From assembly GCF_006345805.1 (NCBI RefSeq), contig NC_042997.1:112034001-112098000 (forward strand): 64,000 bases of DNA, in the 5' to 3' direction. Within the stretch, counting starts at the first letter, position 1, and every line of letters begins with the position of its first letter. Made by a program: the position numbers and the translations under genes. The notes under the pieces are model-generated. The model was not told the DNA's origin. It saw only the letters and a list, made by a program, of their open reading frames with translations, and searched no databases. This document shows, piece by piece, positions 15,790 to 48,267 of the stretch. The DNA is from Octopus sinensis. Lineage: Eukaryota.

Positions 15790-16682
15790 AAGTACTGAAT
15801 ACTTCTGCAAATTATTTATAAATTATTGGACCAATCGTTAGAAGATGAGACTAATGCAGTGCAGTTGCATTCTGAATTCAAAATCCCGCTCATGTCGACT
15901 CTTCCTCTTATCCCATCGGTTTTGATAAGATAAAGTTTTGACAAGATCCGTCTTGTACTGGGTCGATTCTTCACTTTCTGAGTGTGGTAGATTGGTAGAA
16001 TCGATTGAGTATTGGACTAATTGCTTTGCAGTATTTGTTCGGGCTCTTTACTCTGAGTTTGAGGTCAATTTTGCCTTTCATCTTCCGTGGTCGATAAAAT
16101 AGAATAATAATCAAGATTTATCGACCAACCCTTGCCTCTTCAAATTGCTGGCCTTGTGCTAAAACTAGAAATGATCAAAAGCGGTGGATTTGGCAGAACC
16201 GTCACAGCGTCGGACAAAATACCTTGCCGTTTTTCTTCTGACTCTTTACGCTCTGGGTTCAGATTAACTTTACTTTACAACTTTACAGAATCGCTAAAAT
16301 AAATTACTATTAAAGTACTAGGGTAGATATAACCGACTAACACCCTCTCCTCACCCGCACTCATTGTAGGCTTTATGCTGGTCACAAATTATTGTGTGTG
16401 TGTGAGAGAGAAAGAGAGTGTGTGTGAGCGAGTGAATTGCGCTATAGTTTGTTGTTTCCCATTCATTCGAGGTCAAATTTTGTTATATTTTCCTGTGTAG
16501 CATCTATTTATAAAAGTCAAAAGATTTATTTATAAAACTATCGAATATGACGCTCCGTTGTTGTGAGTAGAGGATGAGTGAAAAGGGAACCACGCCTACT
16601 AAATACAGGCTGTTGTCATTTTCGAGTTTAGCTTGCTGGGGCATCGGGCTACCTTTTGCAGAATACATTAATATATAAAAAG

Positions 16683-16739
<57 letters not shown>

Positions 16740-17064
16740 GAAATAAGATAGCTATAGCTATAGATGCGTATATAAGTATGCATTTATTGTATAGAGGCAG
16801 TTTTTTCACTCTGGATAGCTTCTTGAAGTTATAATATAACACGAAACGGAAAACAAAACACAAAAAATACAGGTGATTTATCTGTTAATTTGTCAACAAT
16901 AACATCAAAATAGACGTGCGTATTTTAAAATTCTATGTGCATCTGTATATTGTCGGTGTTCTCATTCATCTGTATGTATATATGTGTGTGTTTCTGTGTG
17001 TATGAGTCCTGTGGTATGAGTGTGTCAGGTGCCCGCGCGCTTGTGTGTATATGAACAAGATCAT

Positions 17065-17336
17065 GGTACTACTTGAGAACAGTGGTCCCGGTGCGCGCAC
17101 TCGCGTATTCACGCTAGCTAGTCATGACTAGTCGATCCTTACTTTGTGTTATTGTGTTATTTACTTTAATTTAAAAATTATTTACTTTGTGTTTTTGTTT
17201 ACTTTGTTTAAGAAAAATTATTTGTGTAAAAAAATTATTTATTTTGCTACGTAGTCGTTGTAGGATCGACTAGTCACGACTAGCTAGCGCGAGTACACGA
17301 GTGCGCGCACCGGGACCACTTTTCTCAAGCAGTACC
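17065..17336. mobile_element. MITE with about 75-bp CpG-rich TIRs (Merlin-like termini)
   Basis: GGTACT...AGTACC ends; exact 9-bp TSD CAAGATCAT at 17056-17064 and 17337-17345; AT-rich spacer. Confidence 0.9.
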
Positions 17337-17400
17337 CAAGATCATTGTGTGTACACGGCAGGGGGTGGGTGTAAGTATGAGCGGTGTGAGCACATGATGT

Positions 17401-17856
17401 GGGCATTCCCTCGGAGATGGGATAGCTAAAGGTGAAAATGAAAATCGTTCTGTATGATCTGTTTGTTCGGCAATTTCCGTAAAAAAATATTTCTTTCATA
17501 TTTTTTCAGCTGAACAGTGAAATACACGATCGCACACGTACGCACGCACACACGTACTCGTTGTCTTCATGTCCAGGAGCGAATTGAACAGACACACTCA
17601 AGCACATACACACACACACACACATACACACACACGCAAATACACGTACATCTTTCTTTTATGTTTTCACGAATCGCTTATGTTTATGTATTTTTGGTGT
17701 GTGTATGTATATTTTTGTATGTATGGGTGTGTTTGTGTGTGTGTGAGCTGGAAAAAATATTAAAGAAAAAAAAAATCTTACGGAAATTGCGAAAGAAATA
17801 GATAAAACAACAATTTTCATTTTCACTTTCGTGATACCATCTCCGAAGGAATGCCC
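17401..17856. mobile_element. Non-autonomous TIR element (about 115-bp TIRs, GGGCATTCC ends) with CA/TG interior
   Basis: Left GGGCATTCCCTCGGAGATGG..TTTTCAGCT matches the reverse complement of the right end; TSD not clean (ATGATGT/ATTATGT). Confidence 0.8.
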
Positions 17857-18304
17857 ATTATGTTTACACGCTAGTATTCCATATTATATGAATTTTTGTG
17901 TAGTGTTGCACACTACTTGAATATCTAATGGCGAGACCTCCGTCCGTCCCGAAGTCCTTCCTATCTCGTAAATGTATATTATAATTTCCTTTCCTCTTTT
18001 TAAAGCTTAAAGTCGTATGGTATTTAGTTGTGTGCCGGAGATTTAAGTATAACAAGTGTCAAACTGGAAACACATGCATGTATGTGAGTGTGTGTGCATA
18101 GTTTCATTTAAGCTGGTCCAGTGGTCTGTCACCCTGCAGTCTCCATAGCGTGCAACCAAGTCTGACTGGACCAGTTAAAATAAGCTACTGCACTCTATTT
18201 TTATCGAGTACTTCACAGCTTCTTATCATCTTTCCTAAAATCATCACATTTTCTCTATCTCACCTTCTCTCTCTCTCTCTTTTGTCTGTTCCCTATTCTC
18301 CTCC

Positions 18305-18665
18305 AGTACGCCCAAGGTGGACAGAAAAAGCGCTTCAAGGACACGCTCAGAGCCTCACTGAAGAGCTATGAGAATTACCCCGGCACTTGGGAAACGCAAG
18401 CACAGGACTGCCCTGCCTGGCAAAAGCTGCACCAACAGAGGTACTGCCTTCTATGAACAGAACAGGTTTGCAGGGGTACAAAGAAAATGTAAACCATGCA
18501 AGTCTGGAGCCAAATCCTTGTCTTCTGTTCCAGCAGACCACAGTGCCGGACTTGTGGCAGAGCCTACCGAGCACGATTCAGACTGATTGGCCACAGCTGG
18601 ACACATCGTGTCCCATCTTCTATCAAGTGATGTCCTTGATCATCAACAATGACGGACAAACTAAT
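18305..18665 (+). mobile_element. 3' end of a second RTE family (BovB/Expander-like), frameshifted
   Basis: RPQGGQKKRFKDTLRASLKSY..WE..AQD..AW, followed by a CxxC..H zinc-finger-like remnant (CRTCGRAYRARFRLIGHSWTH). Confidence 0.75.
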
Positions 18666-18849
18666 AATTCTCCTTCAGGTATAGGGACGCCCTGTTTGGC
18701 CCATTAATCTTGCATAAACAAAATGTCCAACCACAGATGTGTAAAGACGTGGAATTAAGCCCCTTATTTGAACAAGTAAAGGTTGGTATTAGGAAGGACA
18801 TCTGGCTATAGAATACAGCCTTATGGAAAAAGTTGATGTATAAATGAGG

Positions 18850-19274
18850 GAGTATTTCTTCGGAGATGGTATCACGAAAATGAAAATCATTCTGTTTTAT
18901 CTATTCGGCAATTTCCATAAATTCCTTTATTTCTTTTAAAGGGCTTTTTTTCAGCTTACGGACAGCTCACATACAAACACGCACGCACGCACACACACAC
19001 ACACACACAAATGCATAAACGTAGGTGATTCGTGAAATCAAGAAAAAAAATGTATATATATTTGTGCGTATGTGTGAGTGTTACAGTGTGTATTTTCTCA
19101 ACTCTCTCGTGATCATGAAAGACAATGTGTGTGGTGTATATGTGTGTGTGTGTGTGTGAGACTATGTCTTACTGTTCAATCGGAAAATTTTTTGATAAGT
19201 ATTTTTCACGGAAATTGCCAAACAAATCGATAAAATAACGATTTTCATTTTCTCTTTCCTCTGAAGGAATGCTT
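18850..19274. mobile_element. Second, more decayed copy of the GGGCATTCC TIR family
   Basis: CTTCGGAGATGGTATCACGAAAATGAAAAT left end; ATTTTCATTTTC..GAAGGAATGC right end; CA/TG interior. Confidence 0.7.
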
Positions 19275-19641
19275 GGTGACAATGGTTGATGATGATAGTG
19301 GAGGGAGTGATGACTGATAGTAATGTTAGTGCTGGTGATGATTAATGATTGATTGGTGATGATGAGTAATGCTAATTGCTAACGATAATTGATTGGCAAT
19401 GATTGTAGCTGGAGTGATGAGCGATGGTGATGATTGGTGAAAATGGCGTTGGTGGTGACTGATCGTAAATGACGATCATGTTTGAAGATGATTGATGTAG
19501 TGCAATGCTATGAATTTATAAGATGAATATTTTCAACTGACTGACGGTAAATTATTCATTCCCTCTGTTTTAGTTTTAAAATTGAATTAATCATTATTCA
19601 ACAAATCCTGTAGTTTGTAAGCTATTTGTTGTTAAATTTCT

Positions 19642-19877
19642 AGCCAAGAGATGTTTTATTTGTCACATTCTACCAGTATACGAAGTTTAAAAGTGTTTAG
19701 TTACAAAGAAATTATTTTTAAAATTTGCGGGTCAAAGTGAAAAGATCTCAGAATTTTCTCAAGAAAGCCAAGAGAAAAAGATGTTTTATTTGACACATTC
19801 TACCAGTATACGAAGTTTAAAAGTGTTTAGTTACAAATAAATCATTTTAAAAATCTGTCGGTCAAAGTGAAAAGATC
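19642..19877. repeat. Tandem duplication, about 100-bp copies with 130-bp period
   Basis: AGATGTTTTATTTG(T/A)CACATTCTACCAGTATACGAAG...GGTCAAAGTGAAAAGATC at 19649 and 19779. Confidence 0.9.
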
Positions 19878-20056
19878 CAACAAATCAAGTTAATAGAGGA
19901 TACACACACCCCACATTCTCACAAACTGAAATTTTCCTCTTAGTTGGAGAAAACTTAAACCTAGCGGCAATTGTCAGAAATCCTTAAAGAGAAGGGAGAT
20001 AATTTGATACAATAGACAATTTCGAATGTCCGTGTTTCGAATCCAAGGGATAACTT

Positions 20057-20659
20057 GGTACAACTAGCGAACAATGGTCCCGGTGCGCGCATCCGCGCTA
20101 GCTAGTCGTAAGTAGTTGATCCTACAACGACTTGCGCGTATGTTTGTATTCCAAGGCTGAATACATATCATAGAAAATTAAATAATATTTTTCGAACGAA
20201 GTAAATAAAACGCAAAGTAAATAATTTTTTAAACTAAATAAATAAATTATTTGGTACTATTAGCGAACCGTGGTCCCGGTGCGCACACGCGTAGTCGCGC
20301 ATCCGCGCTAGCTAGTCATGACTAGTCGATCCTTTGTGTTTTTGTGTTTTATTTACTTTGTTTAAAATTATTTACTCTGTGTAAAAAAATTATTTATTTT
20401 ATGTTTTATTTACTTTGCTAGATAGTCGTTTTAGGATCGACTAGTCACGACTAGATGCGCGACTACGCATGTGCGCGCACCGGGACCACTGTTCGCTAGT
20501 AGTACCAATTATTTTTATAAACAAACTAAGGTTAGGGTTAGGGTTAAAAAATTAGGTTTAGGGTCAAGGTTAAAATGTGGTTATAGGATCGACTACTTAC
20601 AACTAGCTAGCGCAGATGCGCGAGTGCGCGCACCGGGACCACTGCGCGCTAGTAGTACT
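20057..20659. mobile_element. Merlin-like MITE (outer), containing TTAGGG-like repeats and a nested same-family MITE
   Basis: GGTAC left end; AGTACT right end; exact 9-bp TSD GGATAACTT at 20048-20056 and 20660-20668. Confidence 0.88.
20253..20506. mobile_element. Merlin-like MITE (inner, nested)
   Basis: GGTACT...AGTACC ends; 8-bp TSD AATTATTT at 20245-20252 and 20507-20514; interior homologous to 17065-17336. Confidence 0.88.
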
Positions 20660-21469
20660 GGATAACTTTATACTTGTTTCAGCCCATTAGCCGTCAACAT
20701 GATCAAACCAAATCTTTCCGATGGAGGTGTTGGTGGGCGAAATAAGCTGGGAGGATTGAAAAGGCGCAGATAAATTAGCAATTATAAAAATTTCACATGA
20801 TTTAAAACTTTTATGTTATTATGGACATTATGGCGAAGGAAGAGGACCCACAAAATTCCTCTACTTTTTGGTTTAAGACTTACTGCATATAATCTGTGAC
20901 TACAGTAACAAACTTTTCCCCCGATATCTGTTATAGTTTTAATTAAAGTTGCGCACCATATATATTTTATTCCTGTATTTCATTCTATTTGATCGGCCTG
21001 GTAGGATGAAAAGCAAAGATAGTCTAGATAAGAACTGAAACGGAAGCAATTAAATACCAACAATGTATCTAATCAAACACCTCACTGATTCCTGCCATAA
21101 ACTGCCCTACATTTTGCAATAAATTAATTACATACTACGGCTAAGTTGAGGTTATTGATACGGCCAATTAAACACTGATAATCTGGTCTAATTTGAGTTC
21201 CCTTATTGTTTACTGTGAACACCAAACAAGTGAAATGGCCTGCTAGAAATAACAGTCAAATGAGCTTCAAACAACAGCCTACTGTCTTAAAAATCGCGTC
21301 CACCCATTATAAGCCCGTAAAGTTATATTCTATAATCACAGCTGTCGACCAGGGTTGGTCTGATTAATTACAAACATCAACATTAATAACTAAATGCTAT
21401 TTTATATGGGATCTTTCCATTCTATATCTTCTGTGTGTATAATATTGTATATATAATATATATGTGTTG

Positions 21470-21529
21470 TTAGCCTTAGCAGCGGTGCCAGTGGGACATC
21501 TATTCCGACAGACATGAATTGAGGCTAAG
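21470..21529 (+). other. Candidate non-coding first exon (5' boundary unknown)
   Basis: Non-repetitive, relatively GC-rich island ending in a strong donor AAG|GTGAGT (GT at 21530-21531); no transcript evidence. Confidence 0.3.
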
Positions 21530-22460
21530 GTGAGTGAGTAAGGTTCATATAGTTATATTTAAACAGTGTTTTCACTTTGTCTAACAGAATTAATTAATTA
21601 ATAATTAGTAATAATTAAACAGACGTGGGTGTTTTGTTGTTGTTATGAATATGCTTTAGTTGATCAATGATGAGTGAAAGCATTTTCATGTTTTAAGTTT
21701 TTACTCCCTTAAATTATCCAACAAAATTATGTTTTATAAATCAATCAATTACTTAATTTACAAAAATTTTTATAAAATATTTCAATTTGTGTTTTGATTA
21801 ACATCTATGTCCGTGTATGTGTGTATATGTATGTGTTATAAGTGTTCGCAATTCTGGGTTAAACGTACAAACATGCCAGAGTATATGTATATATATATAT
21901 ATATTTCTGTGCCACTAATATGTAAACAAACTGTTTCTTTTTGTTGTCGAAGTTTTGGAAAATAATATTTCAAAGTAACTATGGGGACTGAATGGAGGCC
22001 ACAATATTTAAAATCCTCTTTCTATTTTAAAGTCAGTAAGTTCAATCAGGAAGGATCAAGCAATTGACTTCGATTACATTGGTAACATTTGACGTGTAGA
22101 ATATTTATTTATATTGTGCGTGCGTGTTTATAAGATGTATGTATAGATAGATAAATATATATGTAGGACCAGACTAAGACCTAGTGGGGCCCCTGGGCCA
22201 GTTGGCTAGGAGTGGGTCTTTTACGGTTGCAGATTCTAAAGGTAGTAAGATAACATAGTTCCATTAAATTTAGGGACCACACACCATTTGAAGAGGCCTC
22301 AATTAAAAGTTTTTTAAGGGACTCAGTTATATTTAATGGCTTTTTAAATATAAAAGGGTCCCCCTCCCCACTGTTCCTTGTAGGTAGGTCCTCGATGCCG
22401 CTCCAACACTTTCTCTCGGACTGTCTCTATCTCTCCTACCTTCCTCTCTTTCTTTTCCTT

Positions 22461-22564
22461 GCGGAGGTAAAGAATACGCACACCACCCGTTTTCGGCGTA
22501 AACCTAACCCTAAAACTAACCCTAACCCTAAACCACTGGGTGTGTGTATTCTTTACCTTCGCCC
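22461..22564. mobile_element. Miniature derivative of the 15018-15789 TIR family with CCCTAA-like interior
   Basis: GCGGAGGTAAAGAATACGCACACC vs GGTGTGTGTATTCTTTACCTTCGC inverted; no clear TSD. Confidence 0.65.
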
Positions 22565-22932
22565 TTCCCCACCTGGTATAAACCACTTCACTTGGTTCTA
22601 CCCCCTCTCCCAGCTGAGAGGTTTTTGCCTCAGGTTACTTGGCAACCCCACATAAAAATTACCCTGTACACTCTGGAAGGCCATCCAGCCATTGACATCA
22701 TACCAAAGCTGATACTGGAACTCGGTGCAGACCTCAGGTTTGCCAGCTCCTGACAAATTGTCCAACCCATGCCAGCATGGCAGGCGGACATTAAATGATG
22801 ACGATGGTGATAATGATGATTAAATTAGCATGAAGTTTTGATGGAAGACAGTTTTAACTTATTTTCATATTTGGGGACCCAAATATTATTTATTGATCTT
22901 TTCTTTTAGACACACATAGTGGTTTATTATTA

Positions 22933-23555
22933 TTACGTTCTGCACACCCTAGTCCAGTGCCCGAGTATTACTGACCTGTGGGTTTATGTCGAACACCTGC
23001 TGTCGCGTGTAGGACGGATCTGGCTATCACCTGAATCCATTGTGAAGATTGCACCGCCGTCCTCTTTTGGCCGGGAGGGGCAGGCAATTTTTATTTGTCT
23101 AGTGGCTGTAGCGAAAGGGGTAGTATGGTGGACCCGTTTGAAAGGGCTAAAGACAGACACTTTCCTCTTTGGTCAAGCCCTCATCAACTTTTTCAAGTTT
23201 CACTTGAAAAGGAAGTTGAGGGTGGAGAGATTGAGGTGTTGCCTTGTAGCAAGTTTGTTGAGAGAATGGCCAGTATGAAAGGGCCAATTCTGAGCGTGCA
23301 CCTGTAAAAAGGAAATTAAAGAAGAGCTCTTATCCTGCTGATCAGGCACCCGTGGCTTTTGTGGGGTTTTCCACAAGCACCTTAAAGTGCCTCCTCTATT
23401 GGGAGTTTTAATTTAATTTTTATTGTTTTGCTTTGTTTACACAAAGAAAACCCATTGTATCGTCCTGTTTTTGTCTTTTATGTTGTTGTATGTCATTTAA
23501 TGTTTTTGTATGTGAAGCCTTGTGGCTAATAAAACAATAAATTATTATTATTATT
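22933..23555 (+). mobile_element. 5'-truncated L1/Tx1-like LINE 3' end
   Basis: HTLVQCPSITDLWVYVEHLL (end of CCHC knuckle) and the downstream C-terminal pattern; AATAAA and (ATT)n tail. Confidence 0.6.
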
Positions 23556-23561
23556 AATATT

Positions 23562-23985
23562 ATGGTGGCGAGCTGGCAGAATCATTAGCACACCGGGCAA
23601 AATGCTTAGTGGTATTTGTTCCGTCTTTACGTTCTTAGTTCAAATTCCACCAAAGTCGACTTTGCTGTTCATCCTTTCGGGGTCGATAAATTAAGTACCA
23701 GTGAAACACCGAGGTCGATGTTATCAGCTAGTTCCCTCCCACAAAATTTCAAGCCTTGTGCCTATAGTAGAAAGGATTATTATTATTAAGGCACCAAGCT
23801 GGCAGAAACATTAGCATGCTGAGCAAAATACTTAGTGGTATTTTGTCTGTCTTTACATTCTGAGTTCAAATTCTGCCAAGGTCAACTTTGCCTTTCTTCC
23901 TTTTGGGGAGTCGATAAATTAAGTACCAGTTGCGTACTGGGTCGATCTAATCAACTGGCCCCCTCCCTCAAAATTTTGGCTGAGA
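23562..23985 (+). mobile_element. Two tandem SINE family B copies
   Basis: GGCG(G/A)GCTGGCAGAA..TTAGCA head, GAGTTCAAATT B-box, TTTCATCCTTTCGGGGTCGATAAATTAAGTACCAG core. Confidence 0.85.
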
Positions 23986-24132
23986 AAGGCTGATGTAAAG
24001 CAGTGAAATTTGAACTCAGATTGTAAAGGTGGGCGAAATGCTGCTCAGTGTTATGCTTGGTTTGCTTATGATTCTGCCAGCCCATAGCCTTAAATAAACT
24101 TAGAAATTTTAAAAAGCAACAAACTGAAGAAT

Positions 24133-24420
24133 AGTTGTATATTTAAGAATTGAGGAATTATGTACATTATTTACATTTGTCCTCATCTGATGAAGGCTGG
24201 AGGATATATCAGCCGAAACATTGTTTCGGCTGATATACCCTCCAGCCTTCATCAGGTGTCTTGGGGAAATTTCAAACCTGGGTTCTTATTCCTAAGGTAT
24301 TTTTCTATGTTATTATTATTATACCCGTGGGCATAACTAACCCCAAGATTCCGAGTTCAATTCCAGACAGTGACCTAAATAATAATAATAATATTAACAA
24401 CAGCAACACTGAAAATTACC
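24133..24420. mobile_element. Multiply inverted copy of SINE family D (tRNA head, hammerhead-like tail), including a 69-bp palindrome at 24187-24255
   Basis: Segments match 57074-57427 in alternating orientations; palindrome centred on T24221 with one mismatch. Confidence 0.8.
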
Positions 24421-25596
24421 AAGTGTCTTCTACTACAACCTCAGGTCTACCAATGGTTGTGACTAAATGTGATAGAGGGGAACCTGTCATCCATGTGTGT
24501 GTATATATATATATATATCTTGCACCAAAAGCATATATATATATATATATATAGGTAATGGAAAATTATAGAGGTGAACTCTTTTCAAGAAACAACAGTG
24601 TAGGGCTCAATTTATTGAACAATTAGATTAAGGTAGCAAAGTACTGAAGGCATTAAAGTATACCGTAATATATATCTTCATCTTCATCATCATCATTTAA
24701 TGTCCGCTTTCCATGCTGGCATGGGTTGGATGGTTCGACTGGGGACTGGCAAACCAGGAGGCTGCGCCAGGCTCTAGCCTGATCTGGCAAGGTTTCTACA
24801 GCTGGATGCCCTTCGTAATGTCAACCACTCCAGTGTAGTGGGTGCTTTTTACATGCCACCAGCACAGGGATCCAGTCAGGTGGCATTGGCACTGGCCATG
24901 TTCAGATGGTGCTTTTTACATGCCACCAGCACAGGAGCCAGTCAGGTGGCACTGGCATCGACCATGCTCGAATGGTGCTTTTAATGCATCACTGGCACAG
25001 GAGCCAGTTAGGCGGCACTGGCATCAGCCATGTTTGAATGTGTGTATGCGTGTGTCTTTATGCTTGTTTCCCTCCACCACCACCACCTCACAACCAGTGT
25101 TGGTTTGTTTAACTGAATGGTTCTTTTATCTTTCACCTGTTTTAATCATTAGACTGTGGCCATGCTGTGGCACCACCTTGAAGAATTTTAGCTGAATGAA
25201 TCAGTCCCAGTGCTAACTTTTTTTTAAAAATAGTACCTATTCTATCAGTTGCTTTTACCAAACCACTAAGTTATGTGGACATAAACGCACCAACACCAGT
25301 TGTCAAACAGTAGTGAGGGACAAACAAAGAAACATACACACAGACATATGACAGGCTTCATTCAGTTTCCATCTTCCAAATCCATTCCCAAGGCTTTGGT
25401 TGGCCCAAGGCTATAGTAGAAGACACTTACTCAGGGTGCTTTGTAGTAGGACTGAACCTGGATCATGTGTTTAGAAAGTTTCTTACCACACAGCCACGCC
25501 TGTTTAAATTTAGGTTATAAGTTTTTATTTTTTTATGTAAATGATTAATGGTTAATATTTTAATATTATTCTGTTTTTTTTCTTTTTGTTTTCCAG

Positions 25597-25639
25597 ATTT
25601 TCATGGCATGATGACAGATTCTTGAGAGAAATAATAGCA
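25597..25639 (+). other. Candidate internal non-coding exon upstream of the Tigger-derived ORF
   Basis: Long polypyrimidine tract TTTTTTTCTTTTTGTTTTCCAG| acceptor and GCA|GTATGT donor. Confidence 0.4.
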
Positions 25640-25784
25640 GTATGTGATACAGGTGCATGAATCTGGTGCCACAGTTAAGCCCTAAAATATTTCACATGAT
25701 CTTAACATGAACCCTAAATACTTCAGCCCTGAAAAGTTATCTACCCTTAGAATATAGTTCAGATATATTTCAATAATGCAGAAA

Positions 25785-26150
25785 TAACAAGAGCACTCAG
25801 AGTGCAAACCTCTGCCCAAGGCAACACCAATGTCCTCTCAACAATTAGCCAGAGATGATTTTTAGAATGAGAATATCTGAAATAAACTCAGCTACTCTCA
25901 CAAATGAGAATGCTAAAAATGAACCCGACTGCTCTCAAAAATTAAGTAAAAAATAGGAAAAATAATCCAGAATCCTTGTCTGATACTGGATCAATCCCAA
26001 AATCTAATCAGTTTGTACCAGTCACGAGGCCAAACATTCCTGAAAGTTTCATTCGAATCCATCCAGCTGCTCTTGAGATATTTTGTCCATGGACAAACAA
26101 ACAAACACGACTGAAAACAATACCTCCGCCTTCGCTAAGGCAGAAGTAAT
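25785..26150 (+). mobile_element. DINE-1/HINE-like (Helentron-associated) non-autonomous element
   Basis: ACCTC(T/C)GCC near both ends, (CAAA)n microsatellite, terminal hairpin ACCTCCGCC-TTCGCTAA-GGCAGAAGT; class assigned from architecture only. Confidence 0.5.
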
Positions 26151-26437
26151 AAACCTTTAATTATCATGGCTTTGAATTTGCTTGGTTTTATATACTGATG
26201 CCAAATCCCCCGAAATCTAATGCAGTATATATATTTATACATTGTAATGTAGATGTAATAGAGAACAACTTAAAGGTCACATGACTTATGAAATGAATCA
26301 GAACAATATATTTAGCTGTTAGTGTGGTGTGGAGGAGGTTAGTCGCCATTTTATAGTGTTTTTATGTAAATCATTCTAACTTCCATTAGTACAGTGATAG
26401 ACATTGAAGTACTAAATGTAATTTGACCTTAATAATT

Positions 26438-27490
26438 ATGGATAAGAGAAAGATTGATGAGGTTAATTCTGGTGTTAAGAGGAGGAGGAAAGTGTTAACT
26501 CTGGACAGTAAACTGGAAATTATAAAAAGACATGAACGTGGTGAGAGTAAAGCAAAAATAGGACGAGATTTAGGAATGAATGAGTCGACTGTGAGAGCGA
26601 TTCTGAAGAAGATTGATGACTATAAAGAAAAAGGTAAAGTAGCGTCAACTTTGGGTCTGCAAACAACAAGGAATAGAAGTCGGATTATGATTGAAATGGA
26701 GCATCTTTTGTCTTTGTGGATTGAAGATTGCAACCTTAAGCAAATTCCTCTAAACACCATGACTATTAAAATGAAAGCTTTAAATATTTTCTCTGCAATT
26801 AAAAGAAATTTAACGAAAGAAAATGAAATTCTAACAGCAGCCGAAATGAAAGAGACTTTTACTGCTAGTTCTGGTTGGTTTGAGAGGTTTAAAACTCGAA
26901 CAGGGATTCACAATGTTCGTATAACAGGGGAGGCTGGCTGTGTAGACAAATATACAAGAGACAAAGATCCAAACACTTTTAAAAAAATAATTGAAGAACG
27001 AGATTATGATGACAAACAATTATTTAATACTGATGAAATGAACTTATATTGGGTAAAAATGCCTTCGAAAACGTTTTTAATAAAGAAAGAAAATATACAA
27101 AAATCACAACCTTTGCTTGGTTTTGATGAAAAAGACGATAGAAATGATGAGGATTTGTTTGAACCTCATTCAAAAGGATTAAGTGATGATGAACTCCTTA
27201 ATTTAGATCGGGAGTGTGTGTACAAAAAAGCAGTCGGTCAAGCGGGCGATAAAGAGGAACAACAAAACATAGAAATTTCTGTAAAAGGACTTGATACAAT
27301 GTTTCAAGAATTTGAAAAATTCAAACAGTTAATAATGGATATTGACCCTAACATTGAAAGAAGAACAAAAGTTCAGCAGAACTTGGACAATGTACTGTCT
27401 TGCTACAAACAGATCCATGCAGAGAAAACGAAAGAAAACAATAAAAACGGAACACAAATGACTTTGGATAAGTATTTTTCAAAGAAATAA
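26438..27490 (+). CDS. Tigger/pogo transposase-derived protein (CENP-B-type HTH_psq + HTH_Tnp_Tc5 + C-terminal tail), DDE core deleted in frame; 350 aa
   Basis: KRKVLTLDSKLEIIK..GESKAKIGRDLGMNESTVRAILK; ASSGWFERFK; TGEAG; FNTDEM..YW..MPSKT; then jumps to GF..DLFEPHSKGLSDDEL..DPNIER..SCYKQI..QMTLDKYFSKK. Uninterrupted ORF from ATG 26438; no flanking TIRs seen. Confidence 0.85.
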   Translation: MDKRKIDEVNSGVKRRRKVLTLDSKLEIIKRHERGESKAKIGRDLGMNESTVRAILKKIDDYKEKGKVASTLGLQTTRNRSRIMIEMEHLLSLWIEDCNLKQIPLNTMTIKMKALNIFSAIKRNLTKENEILTAAEMKETFTASSGWFERFKTRTGIHNVRITGEAGCVDKYTRDKDPNTFKKIIEERDYDDKQLFNTDEMNLYWVKMPSKTFLIKKENIQKSQPLLGFDEKDDRNDEDLFEPHSKGLSDDELLNLDRECVYKKAVGQAGDKEEQQNIEISVKGLDTMFQEFEKFKQLIMDIDPNIERRTKVQQNLDNVLSCYKQIHAEKTKENNKNGTQMTLDKYFSKK

Positions 27491-28507
27491 ATTAACAAAA
27501 ATATCTATTTTGTTTCTGTCTTGTATTATTTATTTGCTGTGAGTGTTAAAACTTTCAGTCAATGTATTTCATATTATCCTCAAACAAGGTGATCTAAATT
27601 AAAACCATCCATGCTAATTTATATTCAAAATACCAGCTTAATAATGACAAAAGTTGTTTCCCTAAGTTCTTCATTATTTTTAAAATTAACTGAAACAAAG
27701 ACAGTGTATTTCAACAGGAATATGGTAACAAAAGCGTTAAAGTGATCTAAAAACCTTCCATCAAAATTTTATGTTATGTTCCAAATACCAGTTTAAAAAC
27801 AACAAATTTCTTTATTTTCAAAATTAATTGAAACAAAAGCAGTGTTTCAACAGAAATCTCTCTCTTTTTACTCTTTTACTTGTTTCAGTCATTTGACTGT
27901 GGCCATGCTGGAGCACTGTCTTTAGTAGAGCAAATCGACCCCAGAGCTTATTCTTTGTAAGCCTAGTACTTATTTTATCTCTTTTGCTGAACCGCTAAGT
28001 TACGGGGATGTAAACACACTAGCATCGGTTGTCAAGCAATCTTTAGGGGGGGGGGGGACAAACAGACACACAAACACATACACACACACACATATATACA
28101 TATATGCGACGGGCTTCTTTCAGTTTCCGTCTACCAAATCCACTCAGAAGGCTTTGGTTGGCCCGAGGCTATAGTAGAAGACACTTGCCCAAGGTGCCAC
28201 GCAGTGGGACTGAACCCAGAACCATGTAGTTGGGAAGCAAGTTACATAGCACACAGCCAGGTAACAATAGGGTTAAAAGTGGTAACAAAATGAATTTTTA
28301 CCAAATTCTGCCATTATTTTGCAATTCTTGAACCAGTTGTTGCATTTTTTTTATTGCCATGTTCAGTTAACATAGCATTTTCACAGATTTAATTAAATGT
28401 GTTCATTAGAGTTTTAATGTAACTCTCATGGATACAAATTAATGAGGGAGCCTGTATGCGGTCACTTGACCTCTTAGAAAAAGCAACCAAAGTCTCACAA
28501 ATCAAAT

Positions 28508-29112
28508 CTTAGAAATTTCTATTTTTAAATCTTACAACATGAGATATTCAGCAACAGTACTTTGGAGTAAAGGTTGTTTGCCAATATAATATGGCAGTCC
28601 TGGTTTAGAACTAATGTTACTGTAATTTAGCCCCAGGGAACAACATTATCTGTGTCCTTATATTTTTGAACAAGGGAATCTAGCACCCCCACTCAGCTCA
28701 AAATAATATCTGTGTCCTAAACCAGGACTGCCATGTTATGGAGGCAAACAATCTTTACTCCAAAGTACTGTTCCTGAAAATCTCGCATTGTGAGATTTAA
28801 AAATAGTAATTTTCTATTTTATAGATCAGTAACTAGTTGTCACTTTGAAAACTATATATTTTGAATGGGAATTTGGCAGCGCCATCTCTAACTGAACAAT
28901 TATTCTGTGCTGATGAAGGAAAATAATCTAGAAATCACAATACACAGATATTGTTTTGAGCTGAGTGGGGGTGCTAGATTCCCTTGTTCAAAAATATATG
29001 GACACAAATCGTGTCGTATAGCCAGCTGGAGACGATGTCTCCTGGGGCTAAATTATAGTAACATCTGTCCTAAACCAGGACTGCCATGTTACGTTGGCAA
29101 ACAATCTTTACT
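28508..29112. mobile_element. Inverted plus tandem copies of a roughly 350-bp unit (same family as 7886-8159)
   Basis: 28508-28714 on minus; 28715-28818 on plus continuing through 28819-28942 into the next unit (28943-29112). Confidence 0.75.
28905..28947 (+). ncRNA. Decayed minimal hammerhead motif
   Basis: Stem I CTGTG/CACAG; CTGATGA; GGA aaataa TCT; GAAA; ATCACAAT (explainable as CpG decay of palindrome ATCGCGAT); AUA site. Confidence 0.55.
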
Positions 29113-30753
29113 ACAAATCAAATCTTGTGCAAAAAACAAAAAAGGTCTCATAAGGTAATATAATGAGATGGTCATGGCCGGAATGCCTTTGATCATTGAT
29201 TTGGTCATTCAGAGTTGACCTGGAGCTCATAAAAAAGGCTTCCATGAATAGAAGAAAATGCCCTGCCTCTGTGACAAACAGATATCTAATAATGGACCAA
29301 TGAGAAGAGGAGGAGGAGGAAAACATGATCCTTTGAGAGTGGTTCGTTGCATAGATGCAGACCACAGGGTCTTTGGGTGGTTTTAGTGGAGTTCATGTTG
29401 TTTCAAGCATTTGGGTAAGGTGTTTAGTTTAATAATAAACGCCTTCCTTATACCTGCCAATCTCAGAGGCCCTGAAAAATGACAGGGTCATGGGCCCTAC
29501 CCCTCCATGATTGAACTTCAGAAAGAAAGGAAAAATATGTGGTTGATGATCTGTTCGAAAATTTGCAGGAAGAAGATGGTCAGGTGGGAATCCCAGGAAA
29601 AAAAAAAAAATGAAAGCCATCTGGGGAGAAAGGATTCAGTAAAGTGTTCAGGGTAAGGCCTGGAAAATATGTCACAGATGGATGACACCATTAGATTGCA
29701 TTCTGAGGGGTGTAAGGGTTCTTACACTTTTGTTTCACCACCATGAAAGAAGCCTATGATGTGTGTGTGTGCTAGCATAGGAGACAGACATTGATGATGA
29801 TGGTGGTGGTGATGGTAGTGGTGCATGTGTGTATGTCTCCTTGTTTTGACATTATGTGATGTTTGTATACGAGCCTTGCCATCATACAAGTGACAGCCTT
29901 TGTTTTCAATCTTCTGTGAAAACATGTCTATCCAAAGGGAAATATTACCTTGCTTGGAAACAGACGAGGATTGGTGACAGGAAGAGCATCCAGCAGTAGA
30001 TCTGTCTCAGAAAATTCCATCTGATTCATGCAAACATGGAAAGGTGGTCATTAAACAATGATGATGATGTTGTTGTTGCCCATTAATGAGTCAGACTTAA
30101 ACCATAATTATAAATTTCCTACTCAGTGAAACCCAGTGACTCATGTTTGGCTATCTGAAATGTGCAGTTTTCATTATTGTAATTAATTTTAATTACACAG
30201 TCTCCTTTATTAACATTTGTTGCTTCTGTAATCTTAAATGCTGCCAACCTCCTCTAATAAATCTTAAAATATTGCATTGTTCTGGCGGCAGCTGTTCAAG
30301 AGGTCACTGATCTCAGAAATTTGTGAAGACGGCCATGAATGCAGCCTCTTTTACCAGAGCAGGCCAACAGAACAGACAAACATAAAAGTGCTGCCCCTAT
30401 TTTGCCTTCGCTGTGTTCACTTCTAAGACTCTAAAACTTTGGTTCTTAATCAGGGTCCGCATGACCCCTGTGGAGTCTATATGACCCTTGGGGGTCCACA
30501 TAAGATTTTGGTGTTAAAATTTATCTGCAATAAATTGGTTATATTTCTTCAATACAAAATGAAGAAAAAAGATTTTAACCATTTTCCTATAAAACTCCTA
30601 ATGGTGGTAAGAAGCTTGCTTCCCAACCACATGGTTCTGGGTTCCGTCCCACTGCATGGCATCTTGAGCAAGTGTCTTCTACTATAGCCTCAGGCCAACT
30701 AAAGCTCCATGAATAAATTTGGTAGATGGAAACTTAAAGAAGCCCGTCGTATA

Positions 30754-30789
<36 letters not shown>

Positions 30790-33735
30790 TGTGTGTGTGT
30801 GTGTGTGTGTATAAATGTATATGTTTTTGTGTCTGTGTTTGTGCCCCACCATCGTTTGACAACCGATGCTGGTGTGTTTGCTTCCCCGTAACTTAACGGT
30901 TCAGCAAAAGAGACCGATAGAATAAGCACCAGGCTGACAAAAAATAAGTCCTTGGGACGATTTGCTTCAGTATGGCCGCAGTCAAACGACTGAAACAAAT
31001 AAATGAATATATAATTAAAAAATGCTTTAAAAAAAAAAATCAAATGTCTACGAGGGTCCATCTGAGTTAAAAGGGAATCAAAAGAGTCCATTGTTGAAAA
31101 ATAGTTGAGAAACACTAAACAACTGATCGACATGCCAGAAATAGTAGTGAAATCTCTCTCAAACCACACCCTATTGTTCTAGTACAAGGACACTTGGATA
31201 ATGTAATTATAGTTATAATTTGTTTGTATATATTTATTTCTTGCGACATTTAGTCATTTTTTAATGTTCTGAATTCAAATTTCACCGAGGTCGATTTTGC
31301 CTTTCATCCTTTCGGGGTCGATAAATTAAGTATCAGTTGAGAATTTGGGTCGGTGTGATCGACTTAACCACTCTCTCGACTCTGCAGGCCTTGAGCCCCA
31401 AATCGAAACTGATAAATAAACATTCAAACATAGTATAGTTTAATTATAAATCAGTTTATTGTCATTGTATACGATGTATACAACTCATTGATATGTGTAG
31501 AGTAAATAAAATAACAGCGACTATTTCGCGTCGTTGATCTGCTAAGATTATTAATAAAAAGCAAGGTGAGAGAAGAATTTGCAAAAATTTTTAAGCCATA
31601 TCTTCTTCTCTCCCTTAATATATATTACCGAGTTTGCTGCCTGTAATAGTTTTAACATGTCAAACATGAAAATTCAGAAATAAATACTTGATATTTTCTT
31701 TAGTTCTATACATCGCCAGAGAGATAAAGTTTAATTTCCGTCTCTATCTTGTTTCTCTAGTTTAGTATCATGTCTCATAAAATAGAGACAAGGTTTCTGA
31801 TTGAAATAACCTTGGAAGAAGACACGGATGTTACACAACTTTTTTCCCCATTTCCTCCTCTCCTATAAATACCAGAACAGTTTTCTTTTAGCTGTTAAGG
31901 CCTTTCACACTTACGTAACAAGTCAATATTTTGAGTGTTGAGGTTGAACTTATTGATTATAGAGAACTATTTTCTATCCGTCAAACAGTGCTACTGCAAT
32001 TTACACCAGCAATTCATTAGTACATGTTTTAATCCAGTTTTAATTATAAAAAGTTCATAGTAGATGTCTGTAGAAAAACACTGCCTTTGTTTTAATTAAT
32101 TATGAAAATAATGAAGTATTTTGTAAAATAACTTTATCATTATTAACCTGGTACTTGGAACTTATATTAACATGGAAAATTTAAATTTGAATCCCTTTAA
32201 AATAGGAATTTTGTACCATAGAATCAAGGGCGGTCTTGGACTGGTTAGTATCAAAAGAATGTTTTTGCCCTGGGACACTTGGTTCTGTCACATGTTATGA
32301 ACAGAACAGCGCTACCTCAACATAATATATCATTTTTCCACTATATTCTTTCGACGAAGTTTTAACCATTATCTTATTATAGAAGACTTAAATATTCTCT
32401 TAAAAGTAATTTCGACAAAAAATTGTTTCTTTTTTTCATGTCTGCTCTGTTAAATTAAGGGCGAAATCCGCTGTAACCACTGACGGCTGTTCCTCATGTA
32501 GTTTGTCGAAGACCAACCAACACAGTAGTAGTTATTTCGGCTACAACATACTATTTAATAACTAAGCTTGTGTTAATTATAAAATAAAATAACAATAACA
32601 GTGATTTATTATTCTTTAAAATAAAACTAATTGTGAACTATTCCTTAAAGGGCAAAAATTGCTAATCGTAGGTTATGTCCCTTTAATTTGTGAGGGGTTC
32701 AAACCTCGCTGAAGTTGAACATTTCTTTGCTCCTGGGACCAATAAAACAAATACATAGCGAAGTACAGATAACCATATGATCGTTACCAAGTCATGTTCT
32801 GTGCATATATCACAAATCATTTTATTGAACTTGATTAGCTGAGACAGTTGACACCTCTCACTCGCAATGTCTTCTGGATATTCTGGTATTTAAAGTAAAA
32901 AAATATTTCCACAACTCGTGTCATCTTCGTAATTAAACAAGAAAGAAGGATTAACAGCACTTTTGCAGTTAAATAAATGAATTAACCAACGTTATTACCG
33001 AGAATGGACAATTCGAAGACCCAGTCTTCTATGACACAATTCTACGGATAAATTATATTTGATCGAACTTAAAGAAACGAAAAATCTAAGTCGACCGTCG
33101 CTAAATTATAATTACATTAACTAAGAACTTTATTATAATGATATGATAGATTATATATTAATTTGTATTCATTATTTTATCCTTTACATATCAATTATAT
33201 CGGTTTCTTAAAAATACGAAAATATCGCTAATAATAAATCAATATTTCATCAACTTTTCGATCTCGTACTTATTTCAGTTATTAGACTGCGGCCATGCTG
33301 GGGCACCACCTTAAAGAATTTTAGTCGAACGAATCGACTGCTGTTTTTGTTTTGTTTTTAAACCTGGTACACATTCTAGCAATTAATTTCGCCGAACCGC
33401 TAAGTTACCGGGACGTAAACACACCAACACGGGTTGTCAAGCAGTGGTGGGAGACAACACAGACACGCTTTTGTGTGTGTGTGTGTGTGAAGTTATCTAC
33501 TGTCAGCGTTCTCTTTTACTCTTTTACTTGTTTCAGTCATGTAACTGTGGCCATGCTGGAGTACCGCCTTTAGTCGAGCAAATCGACCCCAGGACTTATT
33601 CTTTGTAAGCCTAGTACTTATTCCATCGGTCTCTTTTGCCGAACCGCTAAGTTACGGGGACGTAAACACACCAGCATCGATTGTCAAGCGATGTTGGGGA
33701 GACAAATACAGACAAACATACACACACACACACAC

Positions 33736-33779
<44 letters not shown>

Positions 33780-33944
33780 CACACATATACGACAGGCGTC
33801 TTTCAGTTTCCGTCTACCAAATTCACTCACAAATCTTTGGTCGGCCCGAGGCTATAGTAGAAGACACTTGCCCAAGGTGCCACGCAGTGGGCTGAACCCG
33901 GAACCATGTGGTTGGTAAGCAAGCTACTTACCACACAGCCACTC

Positions 33945-48215: not shown

Positions 48216-48267
48216 TAAAATATAAAAGAACACACATACATATATATATATACATACATACATACAT

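What the first reader, a model, noticed from the sequence alone, without database searches (positions are those of the whole stretch)
26438..27490. Intact Tigger-derived gene with a clean in-frame loss of the DDE catalytic core
This is the only long uninterrupted ORF in a window where every other TE ORF is broken. It keeps both HTH DNA-binding modules, the first acidic motif (FNTDEM) and the Tigger C-terminal tail, but lacks the intervening segment (roughly 200 aa by comparison with typical Tigger transposases) carrying the other catalytic aspartates. No TIRs are visible. Inference: a domesticated, catalytically dead DNA-binding protein (CENP-B/TIGD/JRK-like), perhaps a repressor of pogo elements or a chromatin factor. 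A decayed pogo and a pogo-like MITE lie in the same window.
Basis: partly seen in the sequence, partly recalled or inferred. Interest (0 to 1): 0.72.

Follow-up and report, generated by a model that had tools for sequence, protein, structure and literature searches.

The report
Domesticated Tigger transposase gene in octopus
This octopus gene is a former "jumping gene" enzyme that lost its DNA-cutting core but kept its DNA-binding parts, and octopuses have preserved it at one fixed chromosomal site; this is a well-supported but not unprecedented way for new genes to arise.

Summary
[quoted passage not shown] It keeps the first catalytic Asp motif (FNTDEM) and a Tigger-type C-terminal tail, and it lacks about 220 residues covering the whole Pfam DDE_1 domain. 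No TIRs are detectable.

The window is Octopus vulgaris (99.1% identical to OX597814.1). The same 350-codon ORF sits at a collinear locus in O. bimaculoides and in a third, unidentified octopod. dN/dS is 0.14-0.20 (p = 1e-7 to 1e-14). The ORF has no indels where the flank rate predicts 10-13. Constraint is strongest on the two HTH modules (pN/pS 0.02-0.06). A published O. vulgaris transcriptome contig matches the ORF exactly.

The most likely function is a non-catalytic, sequence-specific DNA-binding protein. It carries a conserved C-terminal helical hairpin and a canonical PCNA-interaction (PIP) box. Its closest analogue is Drosophila CAG.

The gene is not unknown. It is annotated in RefSeq, and the O. 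bimaculoides orthologue is listed in a 2023 catalogue of TE-derived transcription factors. What is new here is the evidence of orthology, selection, deletion anatomy and the PIP box. Octopods (a second gene) and marsupials also carry independently derived DDE-less genes from the same Tigger lineage.

The parts
26438..27490 (+). Complete 350-codon ORF plus stop of the Tigger-derived gene. It differs by 1 aa (G244 here, E in the reference) from O. vulgaris CAI9715745.1. The O. bimaculoides orthologue is XP_014779662 / LOC106875876.
26477..26611 (+). CENP-B_N helix-turn-helix (aa 14-58), preceded by a basic KRRRK cluster that looks like an NLS. pN/pS is 0.02.
   Evidence: pLDDT 84-88; Foldseek top hit 1HLV (CENP-B DNA-binding domain with DNA)
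26693..26914 (+). HTH_Tnp_Tc5 second DNA-binding module (aa 86-159). pN/pS is 0.05. nt 26687-26914 are identical to the published stretch of O. vulgaris transcriptome contig comp27021_c0_seq2.
26915..27109 (+). Remnant of the region upstream of and entering the catalytic core (aa 160-224). It includes FNTDEM (27023-27040) with the first catalytic Asp. It is predicted disordered, and pN/pS is 0.28.
27098..27118 (+). In-frame deletion junction (aa ~221-227). Profile positions 216-435 are missing, which is the whole Pfam DDE_1 domain with the 2nd and 3rd catalytic Asp.
27110..27274 (+). Acidic, predicted-disordered linker (aa 225-279). It is the least constrained part, with pN/pS 0.51.
27281..27451 (+). 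C-terminal helical hairpin (helices at aa 282-302 and 306-338, pLDDT about 83) with the clade-wide DPNxER...SCY signature. It is shared with full-length Tigger1-like transposases and has no match in Pfam or PDB. pN/pS is 0.22 for aa 280-350.
27455..27478 (+). Canonical PIP box QMTLDKYF (aa 340-347). It is identical in all three octopods and sits at the same position in many DDE-bearing relatives.
   Evidence: literature
26317..26385 (+). Non-coding block 55-120 nt upstream of the ATG, conserved in all three octopods (contains GCCATTTT at 26345-26352). It is a candidate promoter or 5'UTR element; this is inference only.

Best explanation
This is a host gene derived from a Tigger1-like (pogo superfamily) DNA transposon. 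It has been fixed at one locus since before the divergence of O. vulgaris, O. bimaculoides and a third octopod. An internal in-frame deletion removed the whole DDE_1 catalytic domain, so the protein cannot cut or join DNA.

What selection preserves is, first, the bipartite CENP-B-type DNA-binding domain, which is almost frozen. Second, to a lesser degree, it preserves a C-terminal helical hairpin followed by a canonical PCNA-interaction (PIP) box. An acidic disordered linker joins the two parts.

The most likely mechanism is a nuclear, sequence-specific DNA-binding adaptor. It would recognise motifs descended from its parent element's ends, self-associate through the C-terminal hairpin as pogo transposase and CENP-B-like proteins do, and connect the bound sites to PCNA, meaning replication or chromatin assembly. 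That is how Drosophila CAG and fission-yeast CENP-B homologues behave.

Shown here: transposon origin, loss of the catalytic domain, orthology, purifying selection and its distribution along the protein, transcription, and presence and conservation of the PIP motif. Inferred only: DNA targets, oligomerisation, PCNA binding and the biological role.
For: Transposon origin and anatomy: Pfam CENP-B_N plus HTH_Tnp_Tc5 and no DDE_1. Alignment to DDE-bearing relatives and a 46-sequence profile shows 220 positions missing, including all of DDE_1. AlphaFold gives two confident HTH modules, a disordered middle and a confident C-terminal hairpin. The best PDB fold match is the CENP-B DNA-binding domain bound to DNA, 1HLV.

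Fixed orthologous locus: the window is 99.1% identical to O. vulgaris OX597814.1 and collinear with O. bimaculoides over 21 kb. The third octopod's contig is collinear across both flanks.

Selection: dN/dS is 0.144, 0.141 and 0.196, with binomial p of 1.7e-7, 1.2e-14 and 2.6e-10. The ORF is 96.9% and 92.6% identical where the flanks are 90-95% and 82-84%. There are 0 indels where 10-13 are expected (P = 4e-5 and 2.5e-6), and P(ORF stays open after 78 random substitutions) = 0.026. By region, pN/pS is 0.02-0.06 in the HTH modules, 0.22 in the C-terminus and 0.51 in the linker.

Internal control: a pogo DDE_1 remnant 12 kb away has decayed, with at least 5 stops in 209 codons.

No TIRs.

Transcription: exact 228-nt match to a published O. 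vulgaris transcriptome contig.

PIP box: QMTLDKYF fits Qxx[LIM]xx[FY][FY], is invariant in 3 species, and is shared by many full-length relatives. The chance of one in a random 20-mer is about 3e-4. The pogo and Tigger PIP box and pogo-PCNA binding are documented (PMC4231638; PMC5371812).
Against: Genome-wide copy number was not measured directly, because no octopus genome could be scanned. The single-copy inference rests on protein databases and on this window.

Only three octopods were compared, and the third (SRA run SRR11869391) is unidentified.

O. bimaculoides has four XP accessions for the identical protein. These are probably transcript variants, but identical paralogues cannot be excluded here.

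The transcript evidence is one 228-nt stretch listed from a Trinity assembly. It says nothing about translation, tissue or transcript structure.

The C-terminal hairpin has no detectable relationship to the CENP-B dimerisation domain, so oligomerisation is argued by analogy.

The PIP motif is degenerate in the independently domesticated marsupial genes (QPTLLKYV/I) and in the second octopus gene (QTSLLQYL). PCNA binding may therefore not be the property that drives these domestications.
Confidence: 0.85

Rival explanations
1. KP-type transposition repressor. The DDE-less protein is kept because it still polices related, active Tigger/pogo elements, by occupying their TIRs or poisoning transposase oligomers. 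On this view it has no cellular function of its own.
For: The architecture (DNA-binding domain plus a putative oligomerisation tail, no catalysis) is what a dominant-negative inhibitor needs. DDE-less short forms arise again and again next to full-length relatives across animals. A decayed pogo-family element lies in the same window.
Against: No Tigger1-like transposase remnant other than this ORF is in the 64-kb window. No intact close octopus transposase appeared among 5.8 billion proteins; the closest DDE-bearing relative is a metagenomic fragment at 54% identity. Constraint has persisted across dS of about 0.27, and the decayed pogo nearby belongs to a distant family (about 26% identity). 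A repressor should lose constraint once its target family dies out.
Confidence: 0.2
2. Young or neutral non-autonomous deletion derivative. This would be one of many internally deleted Tigger copies whose ORF is open by chance or because it is recent.
For: Internal deletions are common in pogo/Tigger elements (PMC4231638), and one deletion in three is in-frame.
Against: Orthologous collinear loci in three species. An excess of synonymous changes with p as low as 1e-14. No indels where 10-13 are expected. No TIRs. No paralogue above 46% identity in the databases.
Confidence: 0.02
3. Exon of a larger chimeric host gene. On this view the ORF is the 3' part of a fusion transcript, like POGK, POGZ or SETMAR, and the real protein has extra N-terminal domains from upstream exons.
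For: The O. vulgaris annotation places another same-strand gene model ending about 780 bp upstream. O. bimaculoides has several XP accessions for this protein. A possible splice acceptor (ctaacttccattag) lies about 50 nt upstream of the ATG. Other relatives are fused to zinc fingers or SCAN domains (P0010; P0181).
Against: An in-frame stop lies 10 codons upstream of the ATG (fragment starting at 26408). The N-terminus MDKRK is the ancestral transposase start and is shared with the marsupial proteins. All annotated products in both octopus species are exactly 350 aa.
Confidence: 0.07

Closest known systems
Drosophila CAG (CG12346), a pogo-derived, DDE-less CENP-B-related protein (Mateo & Gonzalez 2014, PMC4231638)
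   Same: It is derived from a pogo-superfamily transposase, lost the DDE domain by internal deletion, and retains the N-terminal CENP-B-type DNA-binding domain. CAG is reported to self-dimerise and to bind PCNA. The octopus protein carries a canonical PIP box and a conserved C-terminal hairpin.
   Different: Independent origin: different phylum, and a Tigger1-like rather than a pogo parent. In CAG no PIP motif was recognisable at sequence level, whereas here it is canonical. No functional data exist for the octopus gene.
Vertebrate pogo-derived genes: CENPB, JRK, JRKL, TIGD2-7, CENPBD1, POGK, POGZ (Gao et al. 2020, PMC7386202)
   Same: Same DNA-binding architecture (CENP-B_N plus HTH_Tnp_Tc5), a fixed syntenic locus, and dN/dS in the same range (0.09-0.21 reported there; 0.14-0.20 here).
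   Different: That paper states that the DDE domain is fully retained in all 12 vertebrate genes; here it is entirely deleted. There is no CENP-B_dimeris domain. The gene is not orthologous to any of them, since it branches within Tigger1-like transposases.
Human Tigger1 / TIGD1 and Tigger1-like transposases (the source of NCBI's name 'tigger transposable element-derived protein 1-like')
   Same: These are the closest sequence relatives. They share the DNA-binding domain, the FNxDE motif, the DPNxER...SCY hairpin and the terminal PIP box.
   Different: Those proteins are about 540-600 aa with a full DDE_1 domain. The octopus protein lacks it, has no TIRs, and is a fixed single locus.
Fission-yeast CENP-B homologues Abp1/Cbh1/Cbh2
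   Same: They are pogo-derived DNA-binding host proteins acting at repeats and replication forks (PMC5371812). This is the functional model proposed here.
   Different: Independent domestication. They keep a degenerate DDE region. No functional evidence links the octopus gene to replication beyond the PIP motif.
Catalogue entry Ob_75876 (XP_014779662, LOC106875876, class 'HTH-PSQ') and Ov_comp27021 (class 'CENPB') in Mukherjee & Moroz 2023, PMC10027918
   Same: This is the same gene, namely its O. bimaculoides orthologue and an O. vulgaris transcript fragment. It was already listed as a potentially TE-derived transcription factor.
   Different: It appears there only as a domain-based listing. 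The two entries are filed under two different families and are not linked as orthologues. No deletion anatomy, synteny, selection test or PIP box is reported, and the paper says its TE-derived factors lack homologues in closest neighbours.

Membership tests
pogo superfamily / Tigger family transposase | N-terminal CENP-B_N (psq-type) HTH | tested here: met
   PF04218, E=5e-14, aa 14-58
pogo superfamily / Tigger family transposase | Second HTH_Tnp_Tc5 DNA-binding module | tested here: met
   PF03221, E=9e-11, aa 86-159
pogo superfamily / Tigger family transposase | DDE_1 catalytic domain with a complete D,D,D triad | tested here: not met
   No DDE_1 hit at E<=1. Profile positions 216-435 are absent. 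DDE_1 spans P0014 residues 221-402, and the octopus protein lacks 215-433. Only the first-Asp motif FNTDEM remains.
pogo superfamily / Tigger family transposase | Terminal inverted repeats with a TA target-site duplication | tested here: not met
   The best inverted pair flanking the ORF matches 15 of 20, equal to the shuffle maximum.
pogo superfamily / Tigger family transposase | C-terminal PIP box (PCNA-binding motif of pogo and Tigger) | tested here: met
   The motif QMTLDKYF is present and conserved. Actual binding to PCNA is not testable with these tools.
Domesticated (exapted) transposase gene | Orthologous copy at the same locus in several species | tested here: met
   Collinear flanks in O. 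vulgaris, O. bimaculoides and a third octopod
Domesticated (exapted) transposase gene | Purifying selection on the coding sequence after fixation | tested here: met
   dN/dS 0.14-0.20, p<=1.7e-7; 0 indels
Domesticated (exapted) transposase gene | Single or low copy number, not an amplified family | tested here: inconclusive
   One copy in the window and one cluster at >=90% identity in the protein databases. The only paralogue is 46% identical. A whole-genome scan was not possible.
Domesticated (exapted) transposase gene | Expression | tested here: met
   A 228-nt stretch from a published O. vulgaris transcriptome contig is identical to window 26687-26914. Protein-level expression was not tested.
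CENP-B proper | C-terminal CENP-B dimerisation domain (PF09026) and orthology to mammalian CENPB | tested here: not met
   No Pfam or PDB match for the C-terminal module. The protein branches within Tigger1-like transposases.
CAG-type DDE-less pogo derivative (functional class, not a clade) | DDE lost by internal deletion with the DNA-binding domain retained in a conserved host gene | tested here: met
   definition from PMC4231638
CAG-type DDE-less pogo derivative (functional class, not a clade) | Self-association and physical PCNA binding | not testable with these tools
   Only the motif and the predicted hairpin are available.

The most novel reading that the evidence does not exclude
The DNA-binding domain plus the C-terminal hairpin and PIP tail of Tigger1-like transposases may be a self-sufficient two-module unit that hosts co-opt repeatedly, each time by a different internal deletion of the catalytic core. 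That would explain two such genes in octopods, one in marsupials, and probably others in cuttlefish, catsharks, lizards and lorises. The resulting proteins would form a convergent class of PCNA-tethered, sequence-specific DNA-binding factors acting at replication forks or on newly replicated chromatin.
Probability: 0.25. Interest if true: 0.6.

Novelty: new member of a known kind. Interest (0 to 1): 0.42.

Why it matters
Domesticated transposases are a recognised source of new DNA-binding proteins, but well-supported cases outside vertebrates, flies, yeast and plants are few. For cephalopods there were only domain-based catalogue listings.

This analysis gives one octopus gene the standard evidence for domestication: synteny, purifying selection, loss of mobility features and transcription. 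It also maps precisely what was kept and what was lost.

The result offers a tractable candidate for asking what DDE-less pogo derivatives do. The parallel octopus and marsupial genes show that losing the catalytic core while keeping the DNA-binding domain and the C-terminal PIP-bearing tail is a repeatable evolutionary route. The result is useful rather than surprising to specialists.

Tried and rejected
(1) TIR search. The standard repeat finder and a 20-mer scan allowing 5 mismatches over 25500-26437 versus 27491-27870 found nothing above shuffle level.

(2) C-terminal hairpin as a CENP-B dimerisation domain. An 18-sequence profile searched against PDB and Pfam gave no credible hit. The dPPR10 hits are spurious sums of 15-residue repeats.

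(3) Logan contigs L003 and L007 as transcripts, for expression evidence. They are collinear with the genome, have no poly(A), and end in microsatellite or SINE sequence. I treated them as genomic DNA.

(4) Identifying the species of SRR11869391 from the literature gave 0 hits.

(5) The cuttlefish short form (P0068/P0171) as an ancient orthologue. It is 33% identical, more distant than many full-length transposases, and it branches elsewhere in the tree. I rejected it as an orthologue.

(6) A processed retrocopy of a spliced transposase mRNA, as an explanation for breakpoints that seemed to recur after the MPxRTFIxKE motif. The breakpoints actually scatter (left 159-263, right 379-470 in P0014 coordinates), and no poly(A) tract follows the ORF. 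The idea is not supported.

(7) Other Tigger1-like remnants in the window. None was found. Only a distant pogo DDE_1 remnant lies at about 39 kb.

It has no obvious CAG/TA termini, and I did not pursue it.
Full report
WHAT IS THERE

Window 26438-27490 (+) is an uninterrupted ORF of 350 codons plus a stop. It is the longest ORF in the window. The next longest is 251 aa, and ten other ORFs of at least 150 aa have no Pfam match.

Pfam finds CENP-B_N (aa 14-58, E=5e-14) and HTH_Tnp_Tc5 (aa 86-159, E=9e-11). It finds no DDE_1, even at E<=1.

I aligned the ORF with DDE-bearing relatives (P0005, P0007, P0008, P0014). It retains everything up to and including the FNxDE motif that carries the first catalytic Asp (FNTDEM, aa 196-201). 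It then jumps to the C-terminal region.

A profile built from 46 full-length relatives (557 positions) matches the ORF at positions 1-215 and 436-551, so 220 positions are missing. In the closest full-length relative, P0014, Pfam DDE_1 spans residues 221-402, and the octopus protein aligns to residues 3-214 and 434-536. The entire Pfam DDE_1 domain has therefore been removed in frame, including the LDNAxxH and QP(L/M)DQG motifs with the second and third Asp.

No terminal inverted repeats flank the ORF. The best candidate matches 15 of 20, which is the level reached by shuffled sequence.

WHERE THE WINDOW COMES FROM AND WHETHER THE LOCUS IS FIXED

The protein is 349/350 identical to Octopus vulgaris CAI9715745.1. 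The window is 99.1% identical over 17.5 kb to O. vulgaris chromosome OX597814.1 at 108.6 Mb.

The same 90%-identity protein cluster contains an O. bimaculoides RefSeq protein (XP_014779662 and three further XP accessions). It also contains a protein from Logan assemblies of SRA run SRR11869391. Both are exactly 350 aa.

The O. bimaculoides locus (CM046601.1 at 4.63 Mb) is collinear with the window across the whole 21 kb compared. The flanks are 80-95% identical and the ORF is 96.9% identical.

The Logan contig is collinear with window 26099-27645, which includes 339 nt upstream and 155 nt downstream of the ORF. Those flanks are 82-84% identical and the ORF is 92.6% identical. The contig has no poly(A), and a sister contig from the same runs ends in repeats, so I treat it as genomic DNA of a third octopod that lies outside the vulgaris-bimaculoides pair.

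These are orthologous copies of one locus, not dispersed copies of a transposon.

SELECTION

Nei-Gojobori dN/dS is 0.144 (window against O. bimaculoides; 20 synonymous and 13 non-synonymous differences). It is 0.141 (window against the third octopod; 46 and 32) and 0.196 (O. bimaculoides against the third octopod). The excess of synonymous changes has binomial p of 1.7e-7, 1.2e-14 and 2.6e-10.

None of the four copies has an indel or a stop. At the indel rate of the immediate flanks, 10-13 indel events would be expected in 1,053 bp (P of zero = 4e-5 and 2.5e-6). Only 2.6% of simulations with 78 random substitutions leave the ORF open.

Constraint is uneven along the protein:

| Region | pN/pS |
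|---|---|
| CENP-B_N | 0.02 |
| Inter-HTH linker | 0.06 |
| HTH_Tnp_Tc5 | 0.05 |
| C-terminal 70 residues | 0.22 |
| Leftover stub around FNTDEM | 0.28 |
| Acidic linker | 0.51 |

An internal control lies 12 kb away. A pogo-family DDE_1 remnant at about 39.2-39.7 kb (Pfam E=4.9e-10) carries at least 5 stops in 209 codons, plus a frameshift relative to its HTH part. That is what neutral decay looks like in this region.

EXPRESSION

The supplementary tables of Mukherjee & Moroz 2023 (PMC10027918) list an O. vulgaris Trinity transcriptome contig, comp27021_c0_seq2. Its 228-nt listed sequence is identical to window 26687-26914 (codons 84-159) and includes the O. vulgaris-specific Thr126.

This shows that the locus is transcribed. 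It does not establish transcript structure, tissue or translation.

An in-frame stop lies 10 codons upstream of the ATG. The N-terminus MDKRK is the ancestral transposase start and is shared with the marsupial relatives. An N-terminal fusion is therefore unlikely.

STRUCTURE AND LIKELY MECHANISM

AlphaFold2 with a 9-sequence alignment gives these features:
- two confident helical DNA-binding modules (pLDDT 80-92);
- a disordered region at aa 159-278;
- two long, confident C-terminal helices at aa 282-302 and 306-338 (pLDDT about 83).

The best PDB fold match is the CENP-B DNA-binding domain bound to its DNA box, 1HLV (E=9e-4, probability 1.00).

The C-terminal hairpin carries a signature, DPNxER...SCY, that is conserved across full-length Tigger1-like transposases. 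It has no detectable relative in Pfam or PDB.

Directly after the hairpin, aa 340-347 read QMTLDKYF. This is a canonical PIP box, Qxx[LIM]xx[FY][FY]. It is identical in all three octopods and occurs at the same place in many DDE-bearing relatives. The chance of one occurring in a random 20-mer of this composition is about 3e-4.

[quoted passage not shown] It also documents that pogo transposase and CENP-B-like proteins self-associate (PMC4231638; PMC5371812).

My best-supported reading is a nuclear, non-catalytic, sequence-specific DNA-binding adaptor. The two HTH modules would bind a defined motif, probably descended from the parent element's ends. The hairpin would mediate self-association, and the PIP box would link the bound sites to PCNA. 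The DNA targets, oligomerisation, PCNA binding and biological role are all inference.

A pure transposon-repressor role is possible, but I rank it lower for two reasons:
- No close Tigger1-like transposase from octopus appeared in the window or in the protein databases.
- Constraint has lasted across dS of about 0.27.

RELATIVES AND RECURRENCE

The nearest non-octopus full-length-coverage hits are 323-324-aa marsupial proteins (41% identity, 99% coverage) with the same short architecture. Their deletion has different breakpoints: they lack P0014 residues ~167-400, against 215-433 in octopus.

The marsupial gene is a contiguous genomic ORF at a collinear locus in Antechinus and Gracilinanus. 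Its dN/dS is 0.19 (p=1.7e-10). It is a separate domestication from the same Tigger lineage.

O. vulgaris has a second DDE-less gene on another chromosome (CAI9724799.1, 270 aa, 46% identical). Its deletion is larger. It is also conserved with collinear flanks in the third octopod, with dN/dS 0.28 (p=1.8e-4).

An exhaustive HMMER search found 3,226 relatives. They include further 310-380-aa DDE-less forms in catsharks, lorises, Anolis, a cordylid lizard, musk deer (named CENPBD1) and the cuttlefish Acanthosepion.

In a neighbour-joining tree the short forms are interspersed with full-length transposases, for example the lizard form with P0036 at 99% bootstrap. The cuttlefish form is far from the octopus genes. 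Loss of the DDE core has therefore happened independently many times. I did not test whether the other short forms are conserved genes.

COMPARISON WITH WHAT IS KNOWN

This is a pogo/Tigger-derived host gene, which is a well-known kind. It fails membership as a transposase, since it has no DDE_1 domain and no TIRs. It also fails membership as CENP-B proper, since it has no CENP-B dimerisation domain and a different parent clade.

The 12 vertebrate pogo-derived genes all retain a DDE domain, with dN/dS of 0.09-0.21 (PMC7386202). The octopus gene shows the same level of constraint but lacks the domain.

The closest analogue is Drosophila CAG. CAG is pogo-derived, lost its DDE domain by internal deletion, binds PCNA and self-dimerises (PMC4231638). 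A 2026 Drosophila study calls this route the 'DNA-binding module pathway' of domestication (PMC13548663).

The gene itself is not unrecorded. It is annotated by NCBI as 'tigger transposable element-derived protein 1-like'. The O. bimaculoides orthologue (LOC106875876) appears as an 'HTH-PSQ' entry in the 2023 catalogue of TE-derived transcription factors, and the O. vulgaris transcript fragment is filed separately there under 'CENPB'. That paper reports no synteny, selection, deletion anatomy or PIP box. It describes such factors as lacking homologues in closest neighbours, which is not the case for this gene.

LIMITS

- No octopus genome could be scanned, so copy number is inferred indirectly.
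- Only three octopods were compared, and the third is unidentified.
- The four XP accessions for the identical O. bimaculoides protein are probably transcript variants, but this was not verified.
- All functional statements beyond loss of catalysis and conservation of the DNA-binding domain are inference.

VERDICT

I rate it a new, well-evidenced member of a known kind, of moderate interest. The most interesting extension is the recurrent, independent co-option of the same pair of modules: the DNA-binding domain and the C-terminal hairpin with its PIP box.

Noticed in passing
window 38900-39700 (+): Decayed pogo-superfamily element. HTH_Tc5-like hits at 38911-39033 are followed, in another frame, by a DDE_1 remnant at about 39258-39677 (Pfam E=4.9e-10) with at least 5 stops. 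It is only about 26% identical to Tigger1-like proteins, so it belongs to a different family from the ORF.
   Followed up: partly
L006 5001-5813 (O. vulgaris OX597819.1 at 109.2 Mb); L007 115-924: A second DDE-less Tigger1-like gene in O. vulgaris (CAI9724799.1, 270 aa, 46% identical, with a larger deletion that also removes the FNxDE motif). It is conserved with collinear flanks in the third octopod, with dN/dS 0.28 (p=1.8e-4).
   Followed up: partly
L004 6001-6972 (Antechinus flavipes); L005 6001-6975 (Gracilinanus agilis): An uncharacterised marsupial gene (LOC127554692 and orthologues, 323-324 aa) is an independently deleted, DDE-less derivative of the same Tigger lineage. It sits at a collinear locus, with dN/dS 0.19 (p=1.7e-10) across the Australian-American marsupial split.
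   Followed up: partly
proteins P0068/P0171/P0172 (Acanthosepion pharaonis CAE1176315.1 and several Logan members): Cuttlefish and relatives carry their own 375-389-aa DDE-less Tigger-like protein, about 33% identical to the octopus one. Its first-Asp motif is mutated (FNEPAG). It branches apart from the octopus genes, so it is probably another independent derivative.
   Followed up: partly
window 27862-28260, with copies at 56287-56678, 33510-33941, 12944-13345, 55544-55926, 47846-48220, 9143-9475, 30604-31009, 11145-11499 and 25124-25496: An abundant SINE-like repeat of about 400 bp (70-86% identity between copies). One copy starts about 370 bp downstream of the ORF and another ends about 900 bp upstream. 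The ORFs found inside these copies have no Pfam match.
   Followed up: no
window 28513-29117: A nested cluster of inverted repeats: arms of 76-99 nt with 87-92% complementarity, in three overlapping pairs. It looks like a foldback or MITE-like structure about 1 kb downstream of the ORF. No obvious Tigger-type termini were seen.
   Followed up: no
window 27586-27860 and 32068-32197: A unit of about 130 bp occurs twice in tandem just downstream of the ORF; the duplication is also seen in O. bimaculoides. It has a reverse-strand copy (78% identity) 4.5 kb away, so it is a small repeat family of unknown type.
   Followed up: no
window 26317-26385: A non-coding block 55-120 nt upstream of the ATG is nearly invariant in three octopods, although neighbouring sequence carries indels. 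It contains GCCATTTT, which from memory resembles a YY1-type core motif. It may be a promoter or 5'UTR element.
   Followed up: no
window 27168-27170 (codon 244): The window encodes Gly244, as do O. bimaculoides and the third octopod. The O. vulgaris reference protein has Glu, so the reference allele is the derived state at what is probably a within-species polymorphism.
   Followed up: no
L001 1-9223 (corresponds to window ~16438-25660, + strand): The O. vulgaris annotation has a same-strand gene model with an 84-aa product. It ends about 780 bp upstream of the ORF and extends beyond the fetched locus. Its relation to the Tigger-derived gene is unknown.
   Followed up: no
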